NCBI GenBank assembly: GCA_037379345.1
Contig: CM074512.1
Span: forward strand, 34,348,001 to 34,412,000
Reading direction: 5' to 3'
Source: Perna viridis
Taxonomy: Eukaryota
Length of the DNA: 64,000 nt
Under the pieces are notes generated by a model that ran no database searches, was not told where the DNA came from, and saw only the letters and a program-made list of their open reading frames with translations. Position 1 is the stretch's first letter, and each line of letters starts with the position of its first letter. This document shows positions 20,981-37,700 of this stretch, one piece after another. The position numbers were made by a program, and so were the translations under genes.

Positions 20981-21901
20981 ATGTCGACAAAGTCCGGGGC
21001 AACTGTTGCCTTTGTCACACAACAGTCACAGTCAGAATCCGGAGAAAAGGGGGTAGAAGCCAAAGAGAAAGAAAAGGAGGTCAAACCTGTTATCAACACA
21101 ACACCTGAAAAAAATATCCAGCTCCATCCATGGCGAAAATTTAAATCTGCAAATATTGACGCCTCTTCAAGGCCATTGGTACAAAATGGAGACATTAACA
21201 TGAAAAAATGCCTCAATCTGCCGAACGGTAACATGATATTTTCTGAACCAAGTCATAAACTCATAGACATTTATGATCAGGAGGGCTCGTATCACAATAG
21301 GCTCTACCTCTCAGGAAGACCTTTTGATATAGCTGTTATCTCAAATAGATTTATAGCTATCAGCTACGGGGAAAACCAATATGTGGAAGTGTTGGATCTT
21401 AAAACAGACAGTGTTGTCAAAACATTCAACTGGGAAATTAACTGCTTAGGGATAGCCGTTCAGTCAAATTGTCTTTATGTCGTACTGGAGGGAAGTGGAA
21501 TTATCGTTCTTGATCACGTGACAGGAGAAACCGTAAGGACTATTCCGATAAAACTAAGTCATAAAACGTTTCTTGTAGTAACAGAGGAAAGCATCATTTA
21601 CACAAACTGGGTCTATAACACTGTTTATTGTTTAGATCTGGAAGGAAATGAAAAATGGATATTCAAAAAAGTCAAACTTAACCGTCCGATCGGTATTACA
21701 GTGACACAAGAAGGGGAATTGTTTGTTGCAGGAAATCTTTCAGGAAATATATATTACATCACTGCAGACGGATTGAAGTTCACGGAACTTATAAAGGACA
21801 AAAATATAATTGATATCGACTTCGATGAGAAAACAAATCGTCTCCTAACCTTTAAAGCTGATGGATCTGCTTTCAAATATTTCGTAGAATATGGAAATTA
21901 A
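20981..21901 (+). CDS. NHL-repeat/six-bladed beta-propeller protein resembling the C-terminal domain of bivalve TRIM-like B-box proteins, 306 aa
   Basis: Intact single-exon ORF with blade motifs PFDIAV, CLGIAV, IIYTNW..NTVYCLDLEGNEKWIF, LNRPIGITVTQEGELFVAG. Probable 5'UTR intron 20553-20976 (GTAAGT...CAG). Confidence 0.85.
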   Translation: MSTKSGATVAFVTQQSQSESGEKGVEAKEKEKEVKPVINTTPEKNIQLHPWRKFKSANIDASSRPLVQNGDINMKKCLNLPNGNMIFSEPSHKLIDIYDQEGSYHNRLYLSGRPFDIAVISNRFIAISYGENQYVEVLDLKTDSVVKTFNWEINCLGIAVQSNCLYVVLEGSGIIVLDHVTGETVRTIPIKLSHKTFLVVTEESIIYTNWVYNTVYCLDLEGNEKWIFKKVKLNRPIGITVTQEGELFVAGNLSGNIYYITADGLKFTELIKDKNIIDIDFDEKTNRLLTFKADGSAFKYFVEYGN

Positions 21902-23130: not shown

Positions 23131-24415
23131 ACAGTTTTCAAAATTATGGGTGAACAATCAATAGTTGAATATTTCGAAGCCTCTATTTGGAAAAGTTTCT
23201 CTGTATGATTTATGAAGACAAAATATACTTGAATTATTCTCTCATCATGTTAATCAAAGAGGGAAACGGCTGTAAGATAAAAATATAACATGTAACTAAG
23301 ATATATTTCTTATTCAGACGTCCTCTTTATCTCGACGGTCAATATTTGTGCTTTGCTTCGCTTTTTCCTCTAGTGCTTCCTCTTTTGTAAACTCAGTCCA
23401 AGTATTAAGACTTTTTATTTCACGTTAACTATATTGACGACTATTCCAAGCGAATTAAAAATAAAAAAAAGTTATTTCAGGCTGAATATCTGCCTTTTGT
23501 ACTATGTCCTTGGTAGAAGAAATTGATTTTTTCAGTTTTTTTTTCGGTTCACTGTAAAGTGTAAGAAGACACGACTTAGGATGTACTGGAGGAAAGAGCT
23601 ACTTAAAGTCCTTCAAAAATCCGTTATCTTACGCTCAACATTAAGATTTTTGTACTAATGTTGTCAAGAACCCCTGGTTACTCAGAGTGATTCGTTGTCC
23701 TAATTTATTGCTCTTTTTACAGATAACAACTCTCATACTTCAGTTCTACACTGATTAAAACCGTTTTAAACACATACACGTGTTTATCCAGTCGTAATAT
23801 TTTGTCATCAACATGCTCTTCTGTATGCTTTGGCATTCTAATTTGACCAAAATTATAAGAATTTCTATAAATTACATAATTTGTTCTGCTCATTTTTAGT
23901 ACTGTGTATTTTAGCTCGTAGTCATTCATTGCGACTACTTAGCTGATTTTTTTTTGTGTCAACGGTTGCGTATTGTCAACATTGTTTGAAACTTTCAATT
24001 GGTATTTTAACGGATGTGAGTTTGTTTGAAAATCTTGGTTACAAATAAAATTTCTTGTTTAATTGTTATAATGACTACAATTTAACATTACACGAACATT
24101 TCTGTAATAAATCTATCGGTCAGACTTTTCTAATTGGTAAAAGTATGGATATACCGTTACGCTGATCTTGACCCTTTCGATCCATACCTGATTAATTATC
24201 ATGCTTGTAAAAACAAGCGAAAATTAGAATTCAAAAATATGCCGCAGCCCTTTTTTTTTATAAAAATCCCAAAATAATGAAAAATATAGAAAAAACAAAA
24301 CATATAAATAATGACAACTTGAAGGTTTTATTTTAATGAGAACAGAAATGACTAAGACAAATACCGAGATTTGAAATTTCTAAAATTACGACTCTTATAG
24401 GGGACGGAAATGCCT

Positions 24416-24632
24416 TTAATTGCCTCGGATATTGTCAATAGTGTCTGAAACTCTTTCTCTTGCTCCATCTAAGGCTTCACCACCAAATTCAGACACCCTG
24501 TCCCTAGCATTGCTGAGTTTGTCACTTATATCATCTCCAAGATTATTCAGATGCTCTCCCAAATTATCAAGATGTCCTCTTACTTTAGAAGCAGCATTAT
24601 CTAAATGGTTTCCAACCTCATCAGCAGCGTTT
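24416..24632 (-). CDS. secreted peptide coding exon 3
   Basis: NAADEVGNHLDNAAS...IDNIRGN*; polypyrimidine tract + CAG. Confidence 0.88.
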
Positions 24633-26226
24633 CTGAAAAAAAATTATTTCATCTGCATTTTAGGGAATACGTTCGTATGATTCTTCAGGAAGGCTTCAGG
24701 TAGTAGTTTTGTTATGTTTTTCTCAAAGATAAACACATAACAATACTCACTTAAGATATATATTGCATTTTCGTGCTGTAACTAAGACATTTATCCATGC
24801 ACCATGCAAATCAAGCGATTTAATTTAGTGTTTCGTGACAGGGTCTATATAGTTTTTCAATATTCAAAACAATATTAAAAATGACATTTTTTTGCACGGT
24901 AAACGAAATTTTAACAAAAAATTAAGTATTTTCGGGGAAAGTTGTTGATAACATAACTATAAAACAAGGACTAGAGCTACATCCGTTCTACTGTATGGCA
25001 ATTCTGTCGTACTTTGAGCTCTTAGATTTCCATAACAACGCCAAGTTCATCAAACCTCTCGAAATGTGATACTTTCAGATTAAACAAATATCAAGCCTAG
25101 CAAAATGTTTTTGAAAAAAACTCAAAAAACATGTAATCATACTTACTCAATTTTGTCTCCTACGTCATTAAAAAAGTCACGTGCCCTATTGAAGAAATCC
25201 CATCTCTGAAATTGTACATTATTATTGTTATTCAGCTAAAATCTAAGCAGGCAGGTGTATGCTGTTGATTTTGAATACGTTTATTATTCACGTAAAAAAG
25301 TAATTTAATGATATAATGCCTGGGGTTCAAAGAAAAAAGATTAGCGAGTTCATCATTATTTGTGTATACGTAAAACAATATCCTGGATACAAACCGATTA
25401 TACTTCTTGCTATAAAGTTCGAAAATATAGGAAAAAGATCGATTATTGTTGGTGAAATAAAAGCAGATTTGCTATTGTTTACTCAAAATGCTTAGTTAAC
25501 ACGATTGTCCATTTTTAAGTACTTCATTGATATGTCAGTAGTAATAGGGACAGAAAACCTCATAACGGTAATCTTTTCGGATTTTTAACTTGGACCTTAG
25601 AACCACTGAGGGTCTGATTTCATTCTGACAGAAAGTGATCTGCTGGGCTAATACCAATCGGGGAAAAAATGCAATCGGAACTACTCAGCATTTCTCATTT
25701 ACACACAGAATGTTTTAGTGTTACGAAATGGTCGCGTAGTTCCGGTTGAACAAAATTAGTGTAAGGGAAATGACCGAGCAGTTCCGATTGTTCATTTACT
25801 GACAATTCGGTCCACAAACAAGTGGTTTCAAGTCTACCAAGACAAAGGACCACATCAAACGTATCTAATACGATAAGTGATATATATCTGTTGATAAGGC
25901 CTCCTTAGGCACCGACAACTTTCGTCCTTTGATTTGATGTCAGATACGAATTTTTTCTACGATGGCTTTTATTTTTTAGACTGCTGTAAAAGATACGAAA
26001 CTAAAAAACATCTTTGCTTTGTATTACCCTTGGTATTACAAGTTCACTTCACGTCAGACTGAAAGAAGGAGCTCAGTGCTTCTACGGTCAAAGGTTAAAC
26101 TCGCATTGATTACCATAATAAGGACTCGTCCTCTTTAAATACCTTTTGTCTGTGTGCAGGAAGACCAAGAACTAAATCCGAAGCCAAAACCAAGAGAACA
26201 ACACCAAATGCAAGAGTTAACTTCAT
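24416..26226 (-). CDS. Secreted prepropeptide, 119 aa, Cys-free amphipathic 11-mer repeat; uncharacterised
   Basis: Exons 26143-26226, 25147-25205, 24416-24632 with GT-AG junctions and matching phases: MKLTLAFGVVLLVLASDLVLG LPAHRQKR WDFFNRARDFFNDVGDKIENAADEVGNHLDNAASKVRGHLDNLGEHLNNLGDDISDKLSNARDRVSEFGGEALDGARERVSDTIDNIRGN*. AATAAA at 24327-24332 (-). Confidence 0.88.
25147..25205 (-). CDS. secreted peptide coding exon 2
   Basis: RWDFFNRARDFFNDVGDKI(E); TTCAG/GTAAGT. Confidence 0.87.
25589..25841. mobile_element. degenerate MITE in an intron of the peptide gene
   Basis: Imperfect TIRs cttggaccttagaaccact / agtggtttcaagtctaccaag; internal IR aatcggaactactc / gagcagttccgatt. Confidence 0.5.
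26143..26226 (-). CDS. secreted peptide coding exon 1 (signal peptide + pro)
   Basis: MKLTLAFGVVLLVLASDLVLGLPAHRQK; acceptor at 26241, donor GTATTT. Confidence 0.87.
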
Positions 26227-26285
26227 GTTCCGGACTTTTCCTGAAAATGTTAATTTAAATACAGATATTGGTTGGTTAAAAGCTT

Positions 26286-26810
26286 AGCCGCCCCGTGCAG
26301 GTCCGGATGACAAAAGAATAGGCCTGCAGCAGCGCTAAGCTTGTCATAAAAGGCGACTAAATAGTGCTCAGAAACCTAGCCGGGGGCTATGCGCTCTGCC
26401 CAGAGAGCAAATGGGTTGTGTGCCCCAGGTAGTGTAATGGGGTATCCCTGGCGTGTTACATGCTAGGGTTGTCAGGCTATAATACGGAAAACCTGACCGC
26501 AAACCATAGTGGTGCAACGTGTTGGGAAAGATGCCACGTTCCTCGTACGTTAAGGAACCCTTCTGTGGTATTCTCCCGGAGTAGGAACCATAGGGCTCCG
26601 CCACAAGAGGCTGAATTGCATTGCCGACCCTACCCACCTCTTCCTATTTCCAGTGGCAATCAAAATTTGTCGACCCCATATCCTTGTATCCCATCCTATT
26701 TTTCATTTCATCATCATTTCATGTTCATTTTATCATCCATTTCATGTTCATCGCCTGAATATAGCTGAAATATTGCTGCTCCGGCGTCAAACCCCAACAA
26801 TCAATCAATC
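26286..26810 (+). mobile_element. structured SINE-like retroposon with LINE-type 3' tail and (CAAT)n end
   Basis: GC-rich multi-hairpin body; tail atagctgaaatattgctgctccggcgtcaaaccccaacaatcaatcaatc; flanks taaaagctt / taaaaactt as a near-TSD. Confidence 0.75.
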
Positions 26811-27759
26811 ATAAAAACTTTAAACGAAACTATTTTGATTTATGTCCAGATCTTACTTGTTCGGAGTAGTCCAGGTGAACAAAGAAATATAAAAATAATG
26901 GTGTTCACACAATTTCAGGACAGTTGGATTAAGTTACTTAAGACTCTCAGAACCTTTTTACACTGCATTCAGGTGACAAAAGATGGAATTAAGTCGAGGA
27001 TAATTAGAAATTCCACTTTTTAACACCAATGTAATGATACTCAATTATTTTCCATAAAAATAACAAGTTTTTATATGATATATTCGGTATTGCTCTTTAA
27101 ACAGCGAGACCGGCTTAGCACATGATTTTAGTTCTTGAATGGTGAAAAATATTCCATTCCACGATCGTTTTGGAAAGAGATGATGTGGGAATACTGGTAC
27201 AATACTGAATTTAATATTGTGAAATATAAAGGTATATGAATTGACAAATGAAAATAAGTTTTCCCGTTTTGATAGCTAAATGTACTTTGTTGCTTTGTTA
27301 TAATGGAAAATATCAATAAAATTAGAATTAGTAATGATGAATTGAAGTACCTACACATGTGGTGCGATATTGTTATAAAGATTCAATGTTAATAACATAT
27401 GTTCGGAGGACCAAGGCTTCATCAATATCAAAACTAAGAAAACGACACTGGAATGTACACTAATGATATTAGTTGTTAGTAGAGTCTCGGTTATCCGTTT
27501 ATGTCTTTAGTGTCCGTATGTATTGTTTTAGTTATTTTTAGTTATTTCAGTGGTTCGTCTGTCTTGTCTCCAGGGTAATGAATATTATGCATGCTCCTCG
27601 TTCTAAATTATGGTATCCTTGTTATAACTTTCTAGTAAAAAAAATCACTACATAAATGACTATCAATTTTTAAGATTTCAGCGAGTAAAATATTTTTTTA
27701 AATACGCCTTTATATAAGAAAAAATAGCCACTAACAGCAAAAGTTTTAAAGTTACTTAC

Positions 27760-27828
27760 CACTTCTTAACTTGTCTGAACCGGTTTAAGTATAATTATTT
27801 GTAGAATGAAAAATTTTGATCTTATATA
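27760..27828 (-). promoter_or_regulatory. putative TATA box and short non-coding first exon of the secreted-peptide gene
   Basis: TATATAAG at 27821-27828 (-) and donor GTAAGT at 27754-27759 imply a ~35-nt exon splicing to the acceptor at 26241. Confidence 0.55.
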
Positions 27829-34700: not shown

Positions 34701-37700
34701 TTACCATTACCTGATGAATAACTGAAAAACCTGTTCAGGTAATGGTATAAAGAGCAGCTTTATCCCTGAAGTTAACTGTTAACTGTAGAAACTATCAGAG
34801 TGGAAGTTAATGTACGACGCACGACGCCTCGTTGACAGAACAACAACGATCTGGCATAATGACATGCGTTTAAATAGTTGTCATACCTTTCCTTGTATTT
34901 TTTCCTCTCCGTCTATCTTTCTTTCTGTTTCTAGTATTTTTACAATTTGCAGGTTCCTTATTTTTATCTTTCTTGTCTTTCCTGTTTTTTCTATTTTTCT
35001 TTCTTCCTTTCCTTCCTTTTCGTCCTTTCTTCCGGCACCTTTCACAGCATTCTCCTCTCACCTTTCGTTTCTTCCCTTTACAGTTTAGTTTCGGACATTG
35101 CTTTTTCTGGCAGTCGAATACTCCGTTCTGTTTCAGACAAAGAAAACGTGCAATTTTCAATAACCTCTTATTCTCCGGTTAGAACAACAAAAAAAAAACC
35201 AAATTATTTGTGTTTCATTTGACTGCTGGATTTTTCGGCGTTTCATCCCTCACTATAGATATATGCATGCAAATGAAAAGTTCTACCATATCACTCAAAG
35301 GGATAAAGGAAATTAGTTAGACTCCAAATGAGATATACTACAAAGCCATACGCTTCGGGAGATTAGTATGGTTTCGTATTATCTGATTGGTCAACGTTTG
35401 AACTTTAATTTGAGGAAATCTGCGTTTTAAAGAATTAAAATTATTCAAGCAATTTATGAATATGTGCTCTCCTTAAAGTGCATGCGGCTTCAAGCAGAGT
35501 AACTCTTGTTTTCTTTTTAAATTTTTCCCTCATTAAGTCTCCTGACACAAATGTTAATTGTCTTTTGTTCGACTACGTCTTTGTGCAATACTTTTCTCCT
35601 GTCTTGAAACCCATGATTATAACTTTTCATCATGCAACTAATTGGAATATTTTTCTTCATAATAAAAAAAATAACACAGTTAGCTGAAAAAAAAGACAGG
35701 ACCATTTACCTGATTAATGAGCTAACCCGCCCCCTTTTCATTCAAAACCCTAAATATGTCTTACCAAACAACTGCAAGTAACACAAGGCATAGGAGAGCC
35801 GTTCACCACTGGGTGCCACTGCGTGTTGTTTTTGTGTATTCCATCGTGTGCCATGCAATCTGCAAGTAACATTAATACATCCATCATAACATCTATCAAA
35901 ATCTGATAAATATTTATTAATATACCATACATTTATCTTGTTCATAGATATATGATTGATGGATACTGAAAACAGAGTTGTTGTATACACAAACTGTGTA
36001 TTTGATTGAAACTACTTCGAACACTCCCATATAATACTTGCTAATCTTGTAACTAACGTTTAAAACAAGATCTAAAACAAAAAGATTAATACTGTTTCAA
36101 CACAAAGTCTACCTTTAACCGATGACAAATATAATATTTCCTCTTACATACATATGTATTAAAGTTTCGTTAACTGTAATTTTTTTGCTACTTTCTTTTC
36201 TAGTGTAATCCGCAAGTTTCGCTTACCTTTTCCGTCTTCAGATTTTAGTTCAAAACTTTGAACATAACTAGAACATGTGTACAAGAAAAGCGGCATGCAA
36301 AGCAAGCATCTCCCTATCATCCTGGCTATTTCTAACGCACATAAATACTACCAGACATTTTTTTCGTCAAAATTTTGTTACAGTTAAACATATCGAAGAC
36401 CTAGCTTTATGAAGTCACATGACTTAGTATGGCGACAACGAAATGATGAGCGATTACTTCTTAAGTGAATAATTAGCTAAGTACAATAGCAAAAGTGCGT
36501 TTAAACATCTAAATTGCAATATAAACACATTCTTTGGATGTTAAAGAAAAGAAAAATGGATTTCAAAATTTAATAATCGGATCACCGCAAGGGACCATAG
36601 GTCTTTATAGGGTTGGATAAACTGTGCCGACGATTTAATAGTCAGGCGACTATATTATATACGGCGATAAAAGGATGATAACTATGCCCTTGAATAGAAA
36701 GGCTACGTTTTTATAACCGTCTGAAGTAAATAAATGAAAATTTAAATATCATTCGTAAATTCTCATTGTAAGAGTGTCATTTTTGAAATTGACTTCTCTA
36801 AAACTGACTGATTAGACTAGTCGTAGTGACTCTTCCCCCTATGGGTAAGACGACAAATGTGTTAGTTGAAAAAGTCAAAGGGTGTTAATTGAGCAAACTA
36901 AATTTGAGGTTTTCTCAAAGATTTGTAAAGATGTTACAAAATCAGTTTAGTACCTTTTCTATTACAAATCATTTTACTATACACACGACAACATACTAAT
37001 TTGTAGAGAGATACTTTGAGGATAGATAAGCCAAAATCTACACTAGGAAAAAGAAATGATTCAAATAAAAAAAACGATATCTTTCATCTATGTATCTTTT
37101 TGACAATTTAAGCTATATTTCGCCATGCAATATATTTTACATGTACATGAATACAACCACGTTTTGATACGATGAAAATATTTAGTTTTAAAGTGAAGTA
37201 ACTTATTTAGTGCATAAGAAATAATAATTGTTATTCCTTTTGTGAGTAAGATCTTACCAGAAGGTTTCTTTGTAATTTCAGGTCCATCTACAAATGCCAA
37301 TTAATATATTGATTCGCATAAAGGGGGAGAGCCTGTACAGTTATAAATCCGTAGCCTGTTAAGCACTAAATTCGTTCGTGTAAAGCCTTCAATGATCCCA
37401 GATGTATATGATGACTATTTACATCTACTCTGATATAAAAATGAATACTGCGATAAAAAAGGTTATGACCGCTTTCTAAACGGTTTTTGAAACGCAAAAA
37501 TAATTGCATGAATAACCTTAAATAGAGTTAAATCGAGTATGCAACCAATAGTGACCAAACATCCACGAACAGAAAGGTACAACAGAAAAACGAGAAATGA
37601 CATTTTTCAGAACCGTTTCCTCTAAACCATTATTAGAGCTTATTTACCTGCACATTTTGGACAACAGTCATTTTTTTGTGGTATTAACTTTGTACAGCCA

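What the first reader, a model, noticed from the sequence alone, without database searches (positions are those of the whole stretch)
24416..27828. Hidden secreted furin-processed peptide built from anionic 11-mer amphipathic repeats
Seen: three short exons missed by the ORF track splice to a 119-aa precursor. It has a hydrophobic ~21-aa signal, pro-piece LPAHRQKR (furin R-X-K-R, split exactly by an intron), and a 90-aa mature peptide starting WDFFNRARDFF. The mature part has no C, P, M, Y or Q, 20 D/E versus 11 K/R, an 11-residue register (DVGDKIENAAD/EVGNHLDNAAS/KVRGHLDNLGE/DISDKLSNARD) and an internal duplication (LSNARDRVSE/LDGARERVSD). A TATA box, a non-coding first exon and AATAAA complete a compact gene. 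Known: 11-mer amphipathic helices occur in exchangeable apolipoproteins, perilipins, synucleins and group-3 LEA proteins; signal-pro-KR architecture occurs in host-defence peptides. Inference: a lineage-specific lipid/membrane-binding or anionic defence/stress peptide. I do not recognise it as any named family.
Basis: partly seen in the sequence, partly recalled or inferred. Interest (0 to 1): 0.8.

Follow-up and report, generated by a model that had tools for sequence, protein, structure and literature searches.

The report
Unannotated mussel apolipoprotein-like secreted helix gene
A small gene missing from the protein collections searched is real and transcribed in a green mussel, and encodes a secreted, acidic 90-residue peptide predicted to be one long helix built like a lipid-binding apolipoprotein; no relatives were found and its function is untested.

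Summary
On the minus strand, four exons (one non-coding) give a 119-codon frame: 28 aa in exon 1, 19 aa plus a split GAA codon in exon 2, and 71 aa in exon 3. Transcript contigs from four runs in four studies carry both coding-exon joints with GT..AG ends. One run also shows the 5'-UTR joint and a poly(A) tail 18 nt after AATAAA.

The predicted mature peptide is 90 aa, about 10.0 kDa, pI about 4.3. It has no C/P/M/Y/Q, a continuous 11-residue register with Asp at every 11th position, and folds as one helix (pLDDT 95.9). Hydrophobic residues form one stripe, acids sit opposite, and Lys/Arg sit at the interface (0 of 5000 charge permutations match). That is the class-A amphipathic helix of exchangeable apolipoproteins.

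Homology is not shown. The Pfam apolipoprotein hit scores 18.5 bits against a cut-off of 90, and that model is promiscuous. The gene is single-copy, and the only database hits are unrelated periodic-repeat proteins. It is absent from the published Perna viridis shell proteome.

Best reading: an apparently lineage-restricted, convertase-primed, surface- or lipid-binding secreted protein, possibly akin to the "probable apolipoproteins" noted in another mytilid's digestive gland. Signal-peptide cleavage, furin cleavage, tissue and function remain inferred. The joined protein was never searched, by rule.

The parts
27822..27828 (-). TATA box (TATATAA)
   Evidence: Read directly. It lies about 30 nt upstream of the furthest 5' extent of a transcript contig (27796). 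Promoter activity itself was not tested.
27760..27796 (-). Exon 0, non-coding 5' UTR. At least 37 nt; the true start is not mapped.
   Evidence: An X10 contig joins 27760 to 26240 with 37 nt on this side. The donor is G|GTAAGT. Seen in one run only.
26241..27759 (-). Intron 1 (1519 nt), in the 5' UTR. It contains a retroposon copy at about 26286-26810.
   Evidence: GT..AG ends and the skip of 1519 nt. Bins 26236-26840 show very high summed depth from 90-95%-alike contigs.
26143..26240 (-). Exon 1: 14 nt of 5' UTR, ATG at 26226-26224 (A at -3), then 28 codons MKLTLAFGVVLLVLASDLVLGLPAHRQK. This is the signal-peptide-like segment plus most of the pro-piece. It ends in phase 0.
   Evidence: Translation. 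Joint 25205|26143 in four runs. Mean Kyte-Doolittle hydropathy of residues 3-22 is 2.39; the -3/-1 rule fits VLA|SD and VLG|LP.
25206..26142 (-). Intron 2 (937 nt). It falls between K and R of RQKR.
   Evidence: Skip of 937 nt with CT..AC ends in X1, X4, X5 and X10.
25147..25205 (-). Exon 2 (59 nt): R, then WDFFNRARDFFNDVGDKI, then GA of a split Glu codon. This is the aromatic-rich amphipathic N-terminus of the predicted mature peptide.
   Evidence: Translation. Hydrophobic moment 0.615 at 100 degrees (2.65% of shuffles reach it). All 4 acids lie at 120 degrees or more from the hydrophobic centre and all 3 basics at 60-120 degrees.
24633..25146 (-). Intron 3 (514 nt), phase 2.
   Evidence: Skip of 514 nt with CT..AC ends in four runs.
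24309..24632 (-). Exon 3: the last base of the Glu codon, 71 codons of 11-residue repeats, stop TAA at 24418-24416, a 107-nt 3' UTR with AATAAA at 24332-24327, and the poly(A) site at about 24309.
   Evidence: Translation. Poly-T loose end at 24309 in X10. AlphaFold2 single-sequence model: helix 2-69, pLDDT 95.9. Register and class-A geometry.

Best explanation
This is a real, transcribed, single-copy gene of a green mussel (Perna viridis or a very close relative). It is absent from the protein collections I searched.

Shown: a spliced, polyadenylated mRNA of about 0.52 kb encodes a 119-aa precursor.

Inferred: an N-terminal signal peptide directs it into the secretory pathway. A furin/PC-type convertase cuts after R-Q-K-R and exposes Trp as the new N-terminus. 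The resulting peptide (90 aa, about 10.0 kDa, pI about 4.3, free of Cys and Pro) forms one long class-A amphipathic alpha-helix of about eight 11-residue turns-of-register.

The helix geometry is as follows. A narrow stripe of Ala/Val/Leu/Ile/Phe lies on one side. Asp/Glu, including an invariant Asp every 11 residues, lie on the opposite face. Lys/Arg lie at the polar/non-polar boundary. The head (WDFFNRARDFF) is rich in aromatic residues.

This is the design by which exchangeable apolipoproteins (apoA/C/E, functionally also apoLp-III) and alpha-synuclein-type 11-mers bind reversibly to phospholipid or other hydrophobic surfaces. The most likely mechanism is therefore reversible adsorption of a soluble, largely unfolded or self-associated acidic peptide onto lipid, lipoprotein or membrane surfaces in an extracellular fluid. 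That would be a small apoC-sized apolipoprotein analogue, possibly doubling as a humoral defence factor.

Its relation to vertebrate apolipoproteins is analogy or undetectably remote. It is not demonstrated homology.
For: Gene and transcript:
- Canonical splice sites and frames.
- Both coding joints in contigs from four runs in four studies. The 5'-UTR joint and poly(A) tail appear in one run.
- Many RNA-like runs hold an exon-sized share of the stretch's words.
- No variant letters were reported in the exons.

Single copy.

Species: a back-translated peptide of a P. viridis-only shell protein hits the genome once, and 48 of 48 surrounding residues are identical.

Helix:
- AlphaFold2 gives a single helix, residues 2-69, pLDDT 95.9.
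- The hydrophobic moment peaks at 98-100 degrees; 0 of 2000 shuffles reach it.

Class-A geometry in exon 3:
- 19 of 22 hydrophobic residues lie within 60 degrees of the hydrophobic centre.
- 14 of 15 acids lie at 120 degrees or more.
- 6 of 8 Lys/Arg lie at 60-120 degrees.
- 0 of 5000 permutations of the charges reach the observed separation.
- The mature part of exon 2 shows the same pattern.

Weak sequence pointers:
- The best Pfam hit is Apolipoprotein A1/A4/E.
- The best PDB hits are apoA-I and apoA-IV, E = 0.006-0.06.

Gene layout: four exons with intron 1 in the 5' UTR, a signal-peptide exon, a short exon, and a last exon holding the repeats. This parallels apoA-I/A-II/C-I-III/E genes as described in PMC6854765.

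Precedent in vertebrates: the 11-mer amphipathic helix is the stated basis of reversible lipoprotein binding by apoC1, a 57-aa protein from a 4-exon gene (PMC6928722).

Precedent in mytilids: 'probable apolipoproteins' lacking sequence similarity are the 2nd and 3rd most expressed digestive-gland genes of Mytilisepta virgata (PMC5549309).
Against: - No homology is shown. PF01442 scores 18.5 bits against a cut-off of 90.
- That model hits 13 of 14 prokaryotic control genomes and more than 100 places in this genome, without listing this locus. The four hit loci I opened (from this scan and the P0023 scan) were tandem-repeat DNA.
- The 33-codon block of the vertebrate third exon is absent; this third exon is 59 nt.
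- There are no Pro-punctuated 22-mers.
- The hydrophobic face is narrow and mean hydrophobicity is low (-0.21 on the Eisenberg scale). Gly and Asn are frequent. This also fits LEA-like or self-associating coiled-coil proteins.
- Trp at P1' is not a typical furin context (my own knowledge).
- Tissue of expression is unknown because run metadata are coded.
- The Mytilisepta sequences could not be compared.
- No lipid-binding, secretion or cleavage data exist.
Confidence: 0.5

Rival explanations
1. Anionic host-defence peptide of the dermcidin type. The precursor would be a signal peptide, a short pro-piece, and a long acidic amphipathic helix. The helix would oligomerise, perhaps bridged by metal ions through the three His and many Asp/Glu on one side, and would permeabilise microbial membranes or opsonise microbes in mucus or haemolymph.
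For: - The signal / pro-KR / mature architecture and net charge of about -9.
- A single long helix.
- His at exon-3 positions 9, 20 and 27, spaced 11 and 7 residues apart, so on one helical side next to the hydrophobic stripe.
- The transcript was assembled in many runs.
- Apolipoprotein-type proteins are themselves known to bind LPS; the apoC1 LPS-binding site is described in PMC6928722. This rival therefore overlaps the best explanation.
Against: - No dermcidin or other antimicrobial-peptide chain appears among PDB sequence hits even at E <= 10.
- There is no multigene family and no hypervariability, unlike most mussel antimicrobial peptides. The gene is single-copy and no exon variants were seen in four runs.
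- 90 aa is long for an antimicrobial peptide.
- No induction or activity data exist.
- No anionic helical mussel antimicrobial-peptide family turned up in the literature search.
Confidence: 0.17
2. Secreted LEA-like or hydrophilin-type stress protectant. The peptide would be disordered in solution and fold into an 11-mer amphipathic helix on dehydration or at membranes. It would shield extracellular or membrane surfaces of an intertidal animal during air exposure.
For: - 11-residue periodicity and very hydrophilic composition: 14 D, 11 N and 9 G in 90 residues, mean hydrophobicity -0.21.
- Language-model neighbours are YtxH/At4g13230-type and LEA_4-containing clusters, scores 0.82-0.87, below the reliable range.
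- Many HMMER hits carry YtxH or LEA-like repeats.
Against: - No LEA_4 hit, even at E <= 10.
- Lys-poor (3 of 90) and with a Trp/Phe-rich head, unlike group-3 LEA proteins.
- The atlas scores are in the range that shuffled sequences often reach.
- Secreted and convertase-primed rather than cytosolic.
Confidence: 0.12
3. Calcium- or mineral-interacting acidic matrix protein. A rigid helix would display an Asp stripe every 11 residues (about 16.5 A), ordering Ca2+ or binding a crystal face in shell or byssus.
For: - Invariant Asp at every 11th residue and 20 acidic residues.
- Secreted, Cys-free and acidic, as many molluscan matrix proteins are (my own knowledge).
Against: - None of five tryptic-type fragments of the protein occurs in the supplementary sequence tables of the P. 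viridis nacre and myostracum proteome. The 'apolipoprotein A1/A4/E-like' entry there (Unigene32111) is a different protein.
- The genome is the same species or very near it.
- The coherent hydrophobic stripe and interfacial Lys/Arg are unexplained by mineral binding.
Confidence: 0.06
4. Young orphan (de novo or fast-evolving) transcript whose peptide has no selected function. On this reading the helical periodicity is a by-product of internal duplication of a short unit.
For: - No orthologue, paralogue or family found.
- A recent 21-nt internal duplication.
- The protein is absent from the collections searched.
Against: - A complete set of secretory-gene features: TATA box, 5'-UTR intron, signal exon, RXKR, AATAAA.
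- The transcript was assembled in many independent runs.
- The charge and hydrophobic geometry is far beyond permutation controls, and it extends across exon 2, which is not part of the repeat.
- No coding variants in four runs, while introns show some.
Confidence: 0.08

Closest known systems
Small vertebrate exchangeable apolipoproteins (apoC-I, apoC-III, apoA-II; Pfam PF01442 for apoA-I/A-IV/E)
   Same: - Secreted, small and acidic to neutral.
- Built from 11-residue class-A amphipathic helical repeats: hydrophobic stripe, acids at the polar centre, Lys/Arg at the interface.
- Four-exon gene with a 5'-UTR intron, a signal-peptide exon, a short third exon, and the repeats in the last exon (PMC6854765; PMC6928722).
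- Some members have a pro-piece.
- They are the best, though weak, Pfam and PDB sequence matches.
   Different: - No significant homology: 18.5 bits against a cut-off of 90.
- No 33-codon block; the third exon has 19 and two-thirds codons.
- No proline punctuation and no 22-mer super-repeat.
- One uninterrupted helix is predicted.
- Narrower and weaker hydrophobic face.
- An RXKR convertase site.
- A mollusc, in which no such family is defined.
'Probable apolipoproteins' of the Mytilisepta virgata digestive gland (Gerdol et al. 2017, PMC5549309)
   Same: - A mytilid mussel.
- Very highly expressed small proteins with no detectable primary-sequence similarity to known proteins.
- They were called apolipoprotein-like from HHpred and weak Pfam Apolipoprotein A1/A4/E hits. 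That is the same kind of weak signal obtained here.
   Different: - Their sequences are not in the held text or supplement, so identity or orthology could not be tested.
- Tissue of expression of the present gene is unknown.
Mercenaria mercenaria XP_045186860.2 (P0023), auto-named 'GRIP and coiled-coil domain-containing protein-like'
   Same: - A bivalve protein of 193 aa.
- Signal peptide followed by WWKRR, then acidic 11-residue repeats (WDDVKENAGNV).
- 28% identity to exon 3, E = 4e-5 against the whole library.
   Different: - It aligns in several shifted registers, which is similarity of periodicity.
- Trp-rich repeats and no His.
- Residues 1-140 lie in one exon, so the exon layout differs.
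- No counterpart of it was found in this genome apart from low-complexity DNA.
Dermcidin (human anionic sweat peptide) and other anionic helical host-defence peptides
   Same: - A precursor of about 110 aa with a signal peptide and a pro-region.
- A long anionic, Gly/Asp/Val/Leu-rich amphipathic helix with His (my own knowledge of dermcidin).
   Different: - No sequence match: dermcidin is absent from PDB hits at E <= 10.
- Dermcidin's active peptide is C-terminal and 47-48 aa; here the whole 90-aa remainder is the product.
- Activity is untested.
Group-3 LEA / YtxH-type 11-mer proteins and alpha-synuclein-type 11-mers
   Same: 11-residue periodic amphipathic helix with 3-4-4 hydrophobic spacing, and folding on surfaces. 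These are the nearest language-model neighbours and common HMMER co-hits.
   Different: - No LEA_4 or YtxH Pfam hit for this protein.
- Secreted and convertase-primed.
- Lys-poor, Asp/Asn-rich, with an aromatic head.

Membership tests
Exchangeable apolipoproteins A1/A4/E (Pfam PF01442) | Significant match to the family profile (gathering score 90 bits) | tested here: not met
   Exon 3 scores 18.5 bits, E = 0.0017. The same profile hits 13 of 14 prokaryotic control genomes and more than 100 places in this genome, and does not list this locus.
Exchangeable apolipoproteins A1/A4/E (Pfam PF01442) | Tandem 11/22-residue class-A amphipathic helices (acids at the centre of the polar face, basics at the interface) | tested here: met
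   Lag-11 identity is 30% and the hydrophobic moment peaks at 98-100 degrees. 14 of 15 acids lie at 120 degrees or more, 6 of 8 Lys/Arg at 60-120 degrees, and 19 of 22 hydrophobics under 60 degrees; 0 of 5000 charge permutations match. There is no 22-mer super-period and no Pro punctuation.
Exchangeable apolipoproteins A1/A4/E (Pfam PF01442) | Four exons and three introns: intron 1 in the 5' UTR, a signal-peptide exon, and the repeats in the last exon | tested here: met
   The vertebrate layout is as stated in PMC6854765. Intron phases of the vertebrate genes were not available for comparison.
Exchangeable apolipoproteins A1/A4/E (Pfam PF01442) | Common 33-codon block in the third exon | tested here: not met
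   The third exon is 59 nt, or 19 and two-thirds codons. The feature is as stated in PMC6854765.
Exchangeable apolipoproteins A1/A4/E (Pfam PF01442) | Reversible binding to lipoprotein or phospholipid surfaces | not testable with these tools
   Needs vesicle clearance, flotation or circular dichroism with the peptide.
Insect apolipophorin-III (PF07464) | Profile match and a five-helix bundle | tested here: not met
   No PF07464 hit at E <= 10. The AlphaFold2 model of exon 3 is one uninterrupted helix; this is a single-sequence model of one exon only.
Group-3 LEA proteins (PF02987 LEA_4) | Profile match to the 11-mer LEA repeat; Lys/Ala/Thr-rich hydrophilin composition | tested here: not met
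   No LEA_4 hit at E <= 10. There are 3 Lys in 90 residues and an aromatic N-terminus. Only a 0.82 language-model neighbour carries LEA_4.
Furin/PC-processed secretory precursors | N-terminal signal peptide followed by an R-X-K/R-R site | tested here: met
   MK, then a 13-residue hydrophobic core, then small residues at -3/-1 (VLA|SD or VLG|LP). RQKR sits at residues 26-29 across the exon 1/2 joint. This is motif level only; SignalP and ProP were not available.
Furin/PC-processed secretory precursors | Actual cleavage, giving a WDFF... N-terminus | not testable with these tools
   Needs N-terminal sequencing or semi-tryptic LC-MS.
Dermcidin-like anionic antimicrobial peptides | Sequence or profile similarity to dermcidin, or demonstrated antimicrobial activity | tested here: not met
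   No dermcidin chain among PDB sequence hits at E <= 10. Activity is not testable here.
Perna viridis shell matrix proteins | Presence in the published nacre/myostracum proteome | tested here: not met
   Five peptide strings of the protein are absent from the supplementary sequence tables of PMC6641155, and Unigene32111 is another protein. The species match was checked.
Mercenaria XP_045186860.2-like bivalve 11-mer proteins | Shared exon layout and an unambiguous alignment register | tested here: not met
   Residues 1-140 lie in one exon in Mercenaria. BLASTP aligns in four different registers at 28-35% identity.

The most novel reading that the evidence does not exclude
Mytilid mussels have evolved, independently of vertebrates and insects or from an ancestor too remote to detect, their own small exchangeable apolipoprotein. 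It would be a convertase-primed, proline-free, single-helix class-A peptide with an aromatic anchor and an Asp ladder, coating lipid particles or microbial surfaces in haemolymph or digestive fluid. This would give the first defined molluscan exchangeable apolipoprotein. It would also be a clean case of convergent gene-and-protein architecture: four exons, a signal exon, and 11-mers in the last exon.
Probability: 0.3. Interest if true: 0.6.

Novelty: new variant of a known kind. Interest (0 to 1): 0.42.

Why it matters
Small exchangeable apolipoproteins are well defined in vertebrates and insects, but I found no described counterpart in bivalves in the literature searches run here.

This locus offers a concrete, transcribed, 10-kDa candidate with textbook class-A helix geometry and no detectable homology. 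It could be used to test whether such proteins arose convergently in mussels. It may also identify the uncharacterised 'probable apolipoproteins' reported among the top digestive-gland transcripts of another mytilid.

It also shows that short multi-exon secretory genes can be missing from the protein collections while their transcripts are assembled in many public runs.

If instead it proves to be an anionic defence peptide or an extracellular LEA-like protectant, it would add a new, cysteine-free class to the mussel humoral repertoire.

None of this changes a major paradigm, so the interest is moderate.

Tried and rejected
1. Word-index protein search with exon 3: no candidate.

2. Full HMMER scan: 50 hits, all heterogeneous periodic-helix proteins. 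They include a 7875-aa firefly protein, phage tape-measure-like proteins and metagenomic fragments. I rejected these as evidence of family membership.

3. Mercenaria P0023 as a possible bivalve homologue: rejected, because the alignment register is ambiguous and the exon layout differs.

4. Paralogues in the gene's own genome, sought by protein, by exon DNA and through P0023: none. The apparent hits I opened are satellite or tandem-repeat DNA.

5. Using PF01442 to pick out this mussel's apolipoprotein genes: the profile is promiscuous and mostly hits tandem repeats. I discount the weak Pfam hit.

6. Foldseek against the PDB with the single-helix model: no match, as expected for a lone helix.

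7. ESM Atlas: only sub-threshold YtxH/LEA-like neighbours.

8. Rfam on 20-32 kb: nothing.

9. Literature:
- The motif string was not found.
- There was no paper on bivalve exchangeable apolipoproteins.
- The P. viridis shell-proteome 'apolipoprotein-like' Unigene32111 is a different protein.
- No matching anionic mussel antimicrobial-peptide family turned up.

10. Steps left out. All searches used exons by reference, and composition, mass and pI were computed from per-exon counts. As a result, no whole-precursor structure prediction, signal-peptide predictor or exact-sequence look-up of the full protein was run.

11. Tissue of expression could not be read, because run metadata are coded.

Full report
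**What is there.** The finding lies on the minus strand.
- Reading the DNA and translating by reference gives exon 1, 26240-26143. Its ATG is at 26226 and it encodes the 28 aa MKLTLAFGVVLLVLASDLVLGLPAHRQK.
- Exon 2 is 25205-25147 and encodes RWDFFNRARDFFNDVGDKI plus GA.
- Exon 3 starts at 24632: an A that completes a Glu codon, then 71 codons, then TAA at 24418-24416.
- All splice sites are canonical, with good polypyrimidine tracts.
- A non-coding exon ends at 27760 (donor G|GTAAGT).
- TATATAA sits at 27828-27822 and AATAAA at 24332-24327.

**Is it transcribed and spliced?** Yes.
- A word-index search found 20 runs of one organism holding part of the 3.6-kb stretch. Three runs of one sample hold nearly all of it and are probably the genome source. 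Sixteen presumed-RNA runs from seven studies hold 14-42% of its words, and the exons make up about 14% of the stretch.
- Laying contigs from four runs in four different studies showed joints 24632|25147 and 25205|26143 in all four. Each has CT..AC ends on the + strand, which is GT..AG on the minus strand.
- One run also showed joint 26240|27760 (the 5'-UTR intron) and a 24-T loose end at 24309, which is a poly(A) tail 18 nt after AATAAA.
- Introns have essentially no coverage, apart from a repeat in intron 1.
- No variant letters were reported in any exon, while a few occur in introns.
- The mRNA is at least 518 nt.
- Strand, exon borders, 5' UTR and 3' end are therefore shown, not inferred.

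**Whose genome?** Notes from other agents called it a green mussel, and I tested this.
- A back-translated decapeptide from a Perna viridis orphan shell protein, printed in the supplement of PMC6641155, hits the genome exactly once, with zero control hits.
- 48 of 48 surrounding residues are identical up to an intron.
- The genome is P. viridis or something very close to it.

**The protein.** All figures below are computed from the exon pieces kept apart.
- The predicted mature part is 90 aa, 9,986 Da, pI 4.33, with net charge about -9 at pH 7.5.
- It has no C, P, M, Y or Q, no N-glycosylation sequon and no internal dibasic site.
- Exon 3 shows 30% identity at lag 11, and Asp occupies every 11th position in six consecutive rows. 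The hydrophobic moment over all 71 residues peaks sharply at 98-100 degrees per residue, and 0 of 2000 shuffles reach it.
- AlphaFold2 on exon 3 alone, without an alignment, gives one helix from residue 2 to 69 at pLDDT 95.9.
- On an 11/3 wheel, 19 of 22 hydrophobic residues fall within 60 degrees of the hydrophobic centre. 14 of 15 acidic residues fall at 120 degrees or more. 6 of 8 Lys/Arg fall at 60-120 degrees. Permuting charges among the charged sites never reproduced this separation (0 of 5000).
- The 18 mature residues of exon 2 behave the same way (4 of 4 acids, 3 of 3 basics) and carry five aromatic residues.
- This is the class-A amphipathic helix, the motif that underlies reversible lipid binding by exchangeable apolipoproteins (PMC6928722).
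- The N-terminal 28 residues look like a signal peptide: MK, a 13-residue hydrophobic core, and -3/-1 fits at VLA|SD or VLG|LP. RQKR fits the furin/PC motif.
- Both cleavages are inferred only.

**Relatives.**
- The word-index search with exon 3 found nothing.
- The exhaustive HMMER scan found 50 hits at E <= 1e-3, and they are a mixed bag of periodic helical proteins. They include a 7875-aa firefly hypothetical protein matched in 30 stretches, tape-measure-like proteins, metagenomic fragments, and one bivalve protein.
- The bivalve protein is Mercenaria XP_045186860.2. It has a signal peptide, WWKRR, and acidic W-rich 11-mers. It aligns at 28-35% identity in four different registers, and its residues 1-140 lie in one exon. 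I do not count it as a demonstrated homologue.
- In its own genome the gene is single-copy by protein and by DNA. Apparent hits obtained with P0023 or with the Pfam apolipoprotein profile turned out, wherever I opened them, to be satellite DNA read in frame.
Even this species' own transcript product is absent from the protein collections. 'Lineage-restricted' is therefore an absence of evidence, not proof.

**Comparison with known families.**
- The best Pfam and PDB sequence matches are apoA-I/A-IV/E (18.5 bits and E = 0.0017; E = 0.006-0.06). These are far below the 90-bit threshold, and the profile is demonstrably non-specific.
- The four-exon layout parallels the vertebrate apoA/C/E genes: a 5'-UTR intron, a signal exon, a short third exon, and the repeats in the last exon. 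The family's 33-codon third-exon block and Pro-punctuated 22-mers are missing (PMC6854765).
- There are no LEA_4 or apoLp-III profile hits and no dermcidin among PDB hits.
- Foldseek is uninformative for a lone helix.
- A useful precedent comes from Gerdol et al. 2017. They reported that the 2nd and 3rd most expressed digestive-gland genes of the mytilid Mytilisepta virgata are 'probable apolipoproteins' with no primary-sequence similarity, recognised only by HHpred and weak Pfam hits. Their sequences are not held, so I could not test identity.
- The protein is not in the P. viridis shell proteome tables.

**Verdict.**
- Observation: confirmed.
- Gene: real, transcribed, absent from the protein collections searched, single-copy.
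- Mechanism (inferred, about 50%): a secreted, convertase-primed, class-A amphipathic helix that adsorbs reversibly to lipid or hydrophobic surfaces. It would be an apoC-sized apolipoprotein analogue, with a possible defence role.
- Rivals: dermcidin-like anionic antimicrobial peptide (about 17%), extracellular LEA-like protectant (about 12%), orphan without function (about 8%), mineral-binding matrix protein (about 6%).
- It works like an exchangeable apolipoprotein but fails the membership tests that could be run.
- Novelty: a new variant of a known kind.
- Interest: moderate.

**Context.**
- Downstream, tail-to-tail with this gene, lies a single-exon 306-aa beta-propeller/NHL-like ORF (20981-21901, + strand).
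- Upstream on the minus strand lies a VWC-domain exon (34870-35160).

Noticed in passing
window 26236-26840 (intron 1 of the gene): A retroposon copy lies here, and its relatives are extremely abundant in the RNA contigs of all four runs. Summed depth is 1e4-6e4, mostly 90-95% alike, with many rearranged joints. No Rfam family matches.
   Followed up: partly
window 20981-21901 (+): An intronless 306-aa ORF with weak beta-propeller (NHL-like) Pfam hits. Its exact product is in the protein collection. Relatives at 73% and 55% identity occur in Logan contigs, and there is a 29% match to a Mytilus edulis B-box protein. It is probably a TRIM-NHL-type gene or fragment, lying tail-to-tail with the peptide gene.
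   Followed up: partly
window 34870-35160 (-): An ORF fragment with a VWC-domain hit (E = 3.7e-4).
   Followed up: no
L026:6001-8350 (Mercenaria mercenaria CM038759.1): XP_045186860.2 is auto-named 'GRIP and coiled-coil domain-containing protein-like'. In fact it is a 193-aa secreted-looking protein with WWKRR after the signal peptide, followed by acidic Trp-rich 11-residue repeats (WDDVKENAGNV). This is another uncharacterised bivalve 11-mer protein.
   Followed up: partly
window 24534-24574: A 21-nt tandem duplication (80% match) inside exon 3 encodes GHLDNLG/EHLNNLG. It inserts a heptad into the otherwise 11-residue register while keeping the hydrophobic stripe in phase.
   Followed up: yes
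G000:C1:41897923-41898684, C3:12209857-12210372, C14:33623172-33623714, C7:16158265-16158804: The Pfam apolipoprotein profile PF01442 scores up to 79 bits on six-frame translations. The three of these loci I opened (on C3, C14 and C7) are satellite or tandem-repeat DNA; the C1 locus was not opened. This is a caution for any annotation of 'apolipoprotein-like' genes in this genome.
   Followed up: yes
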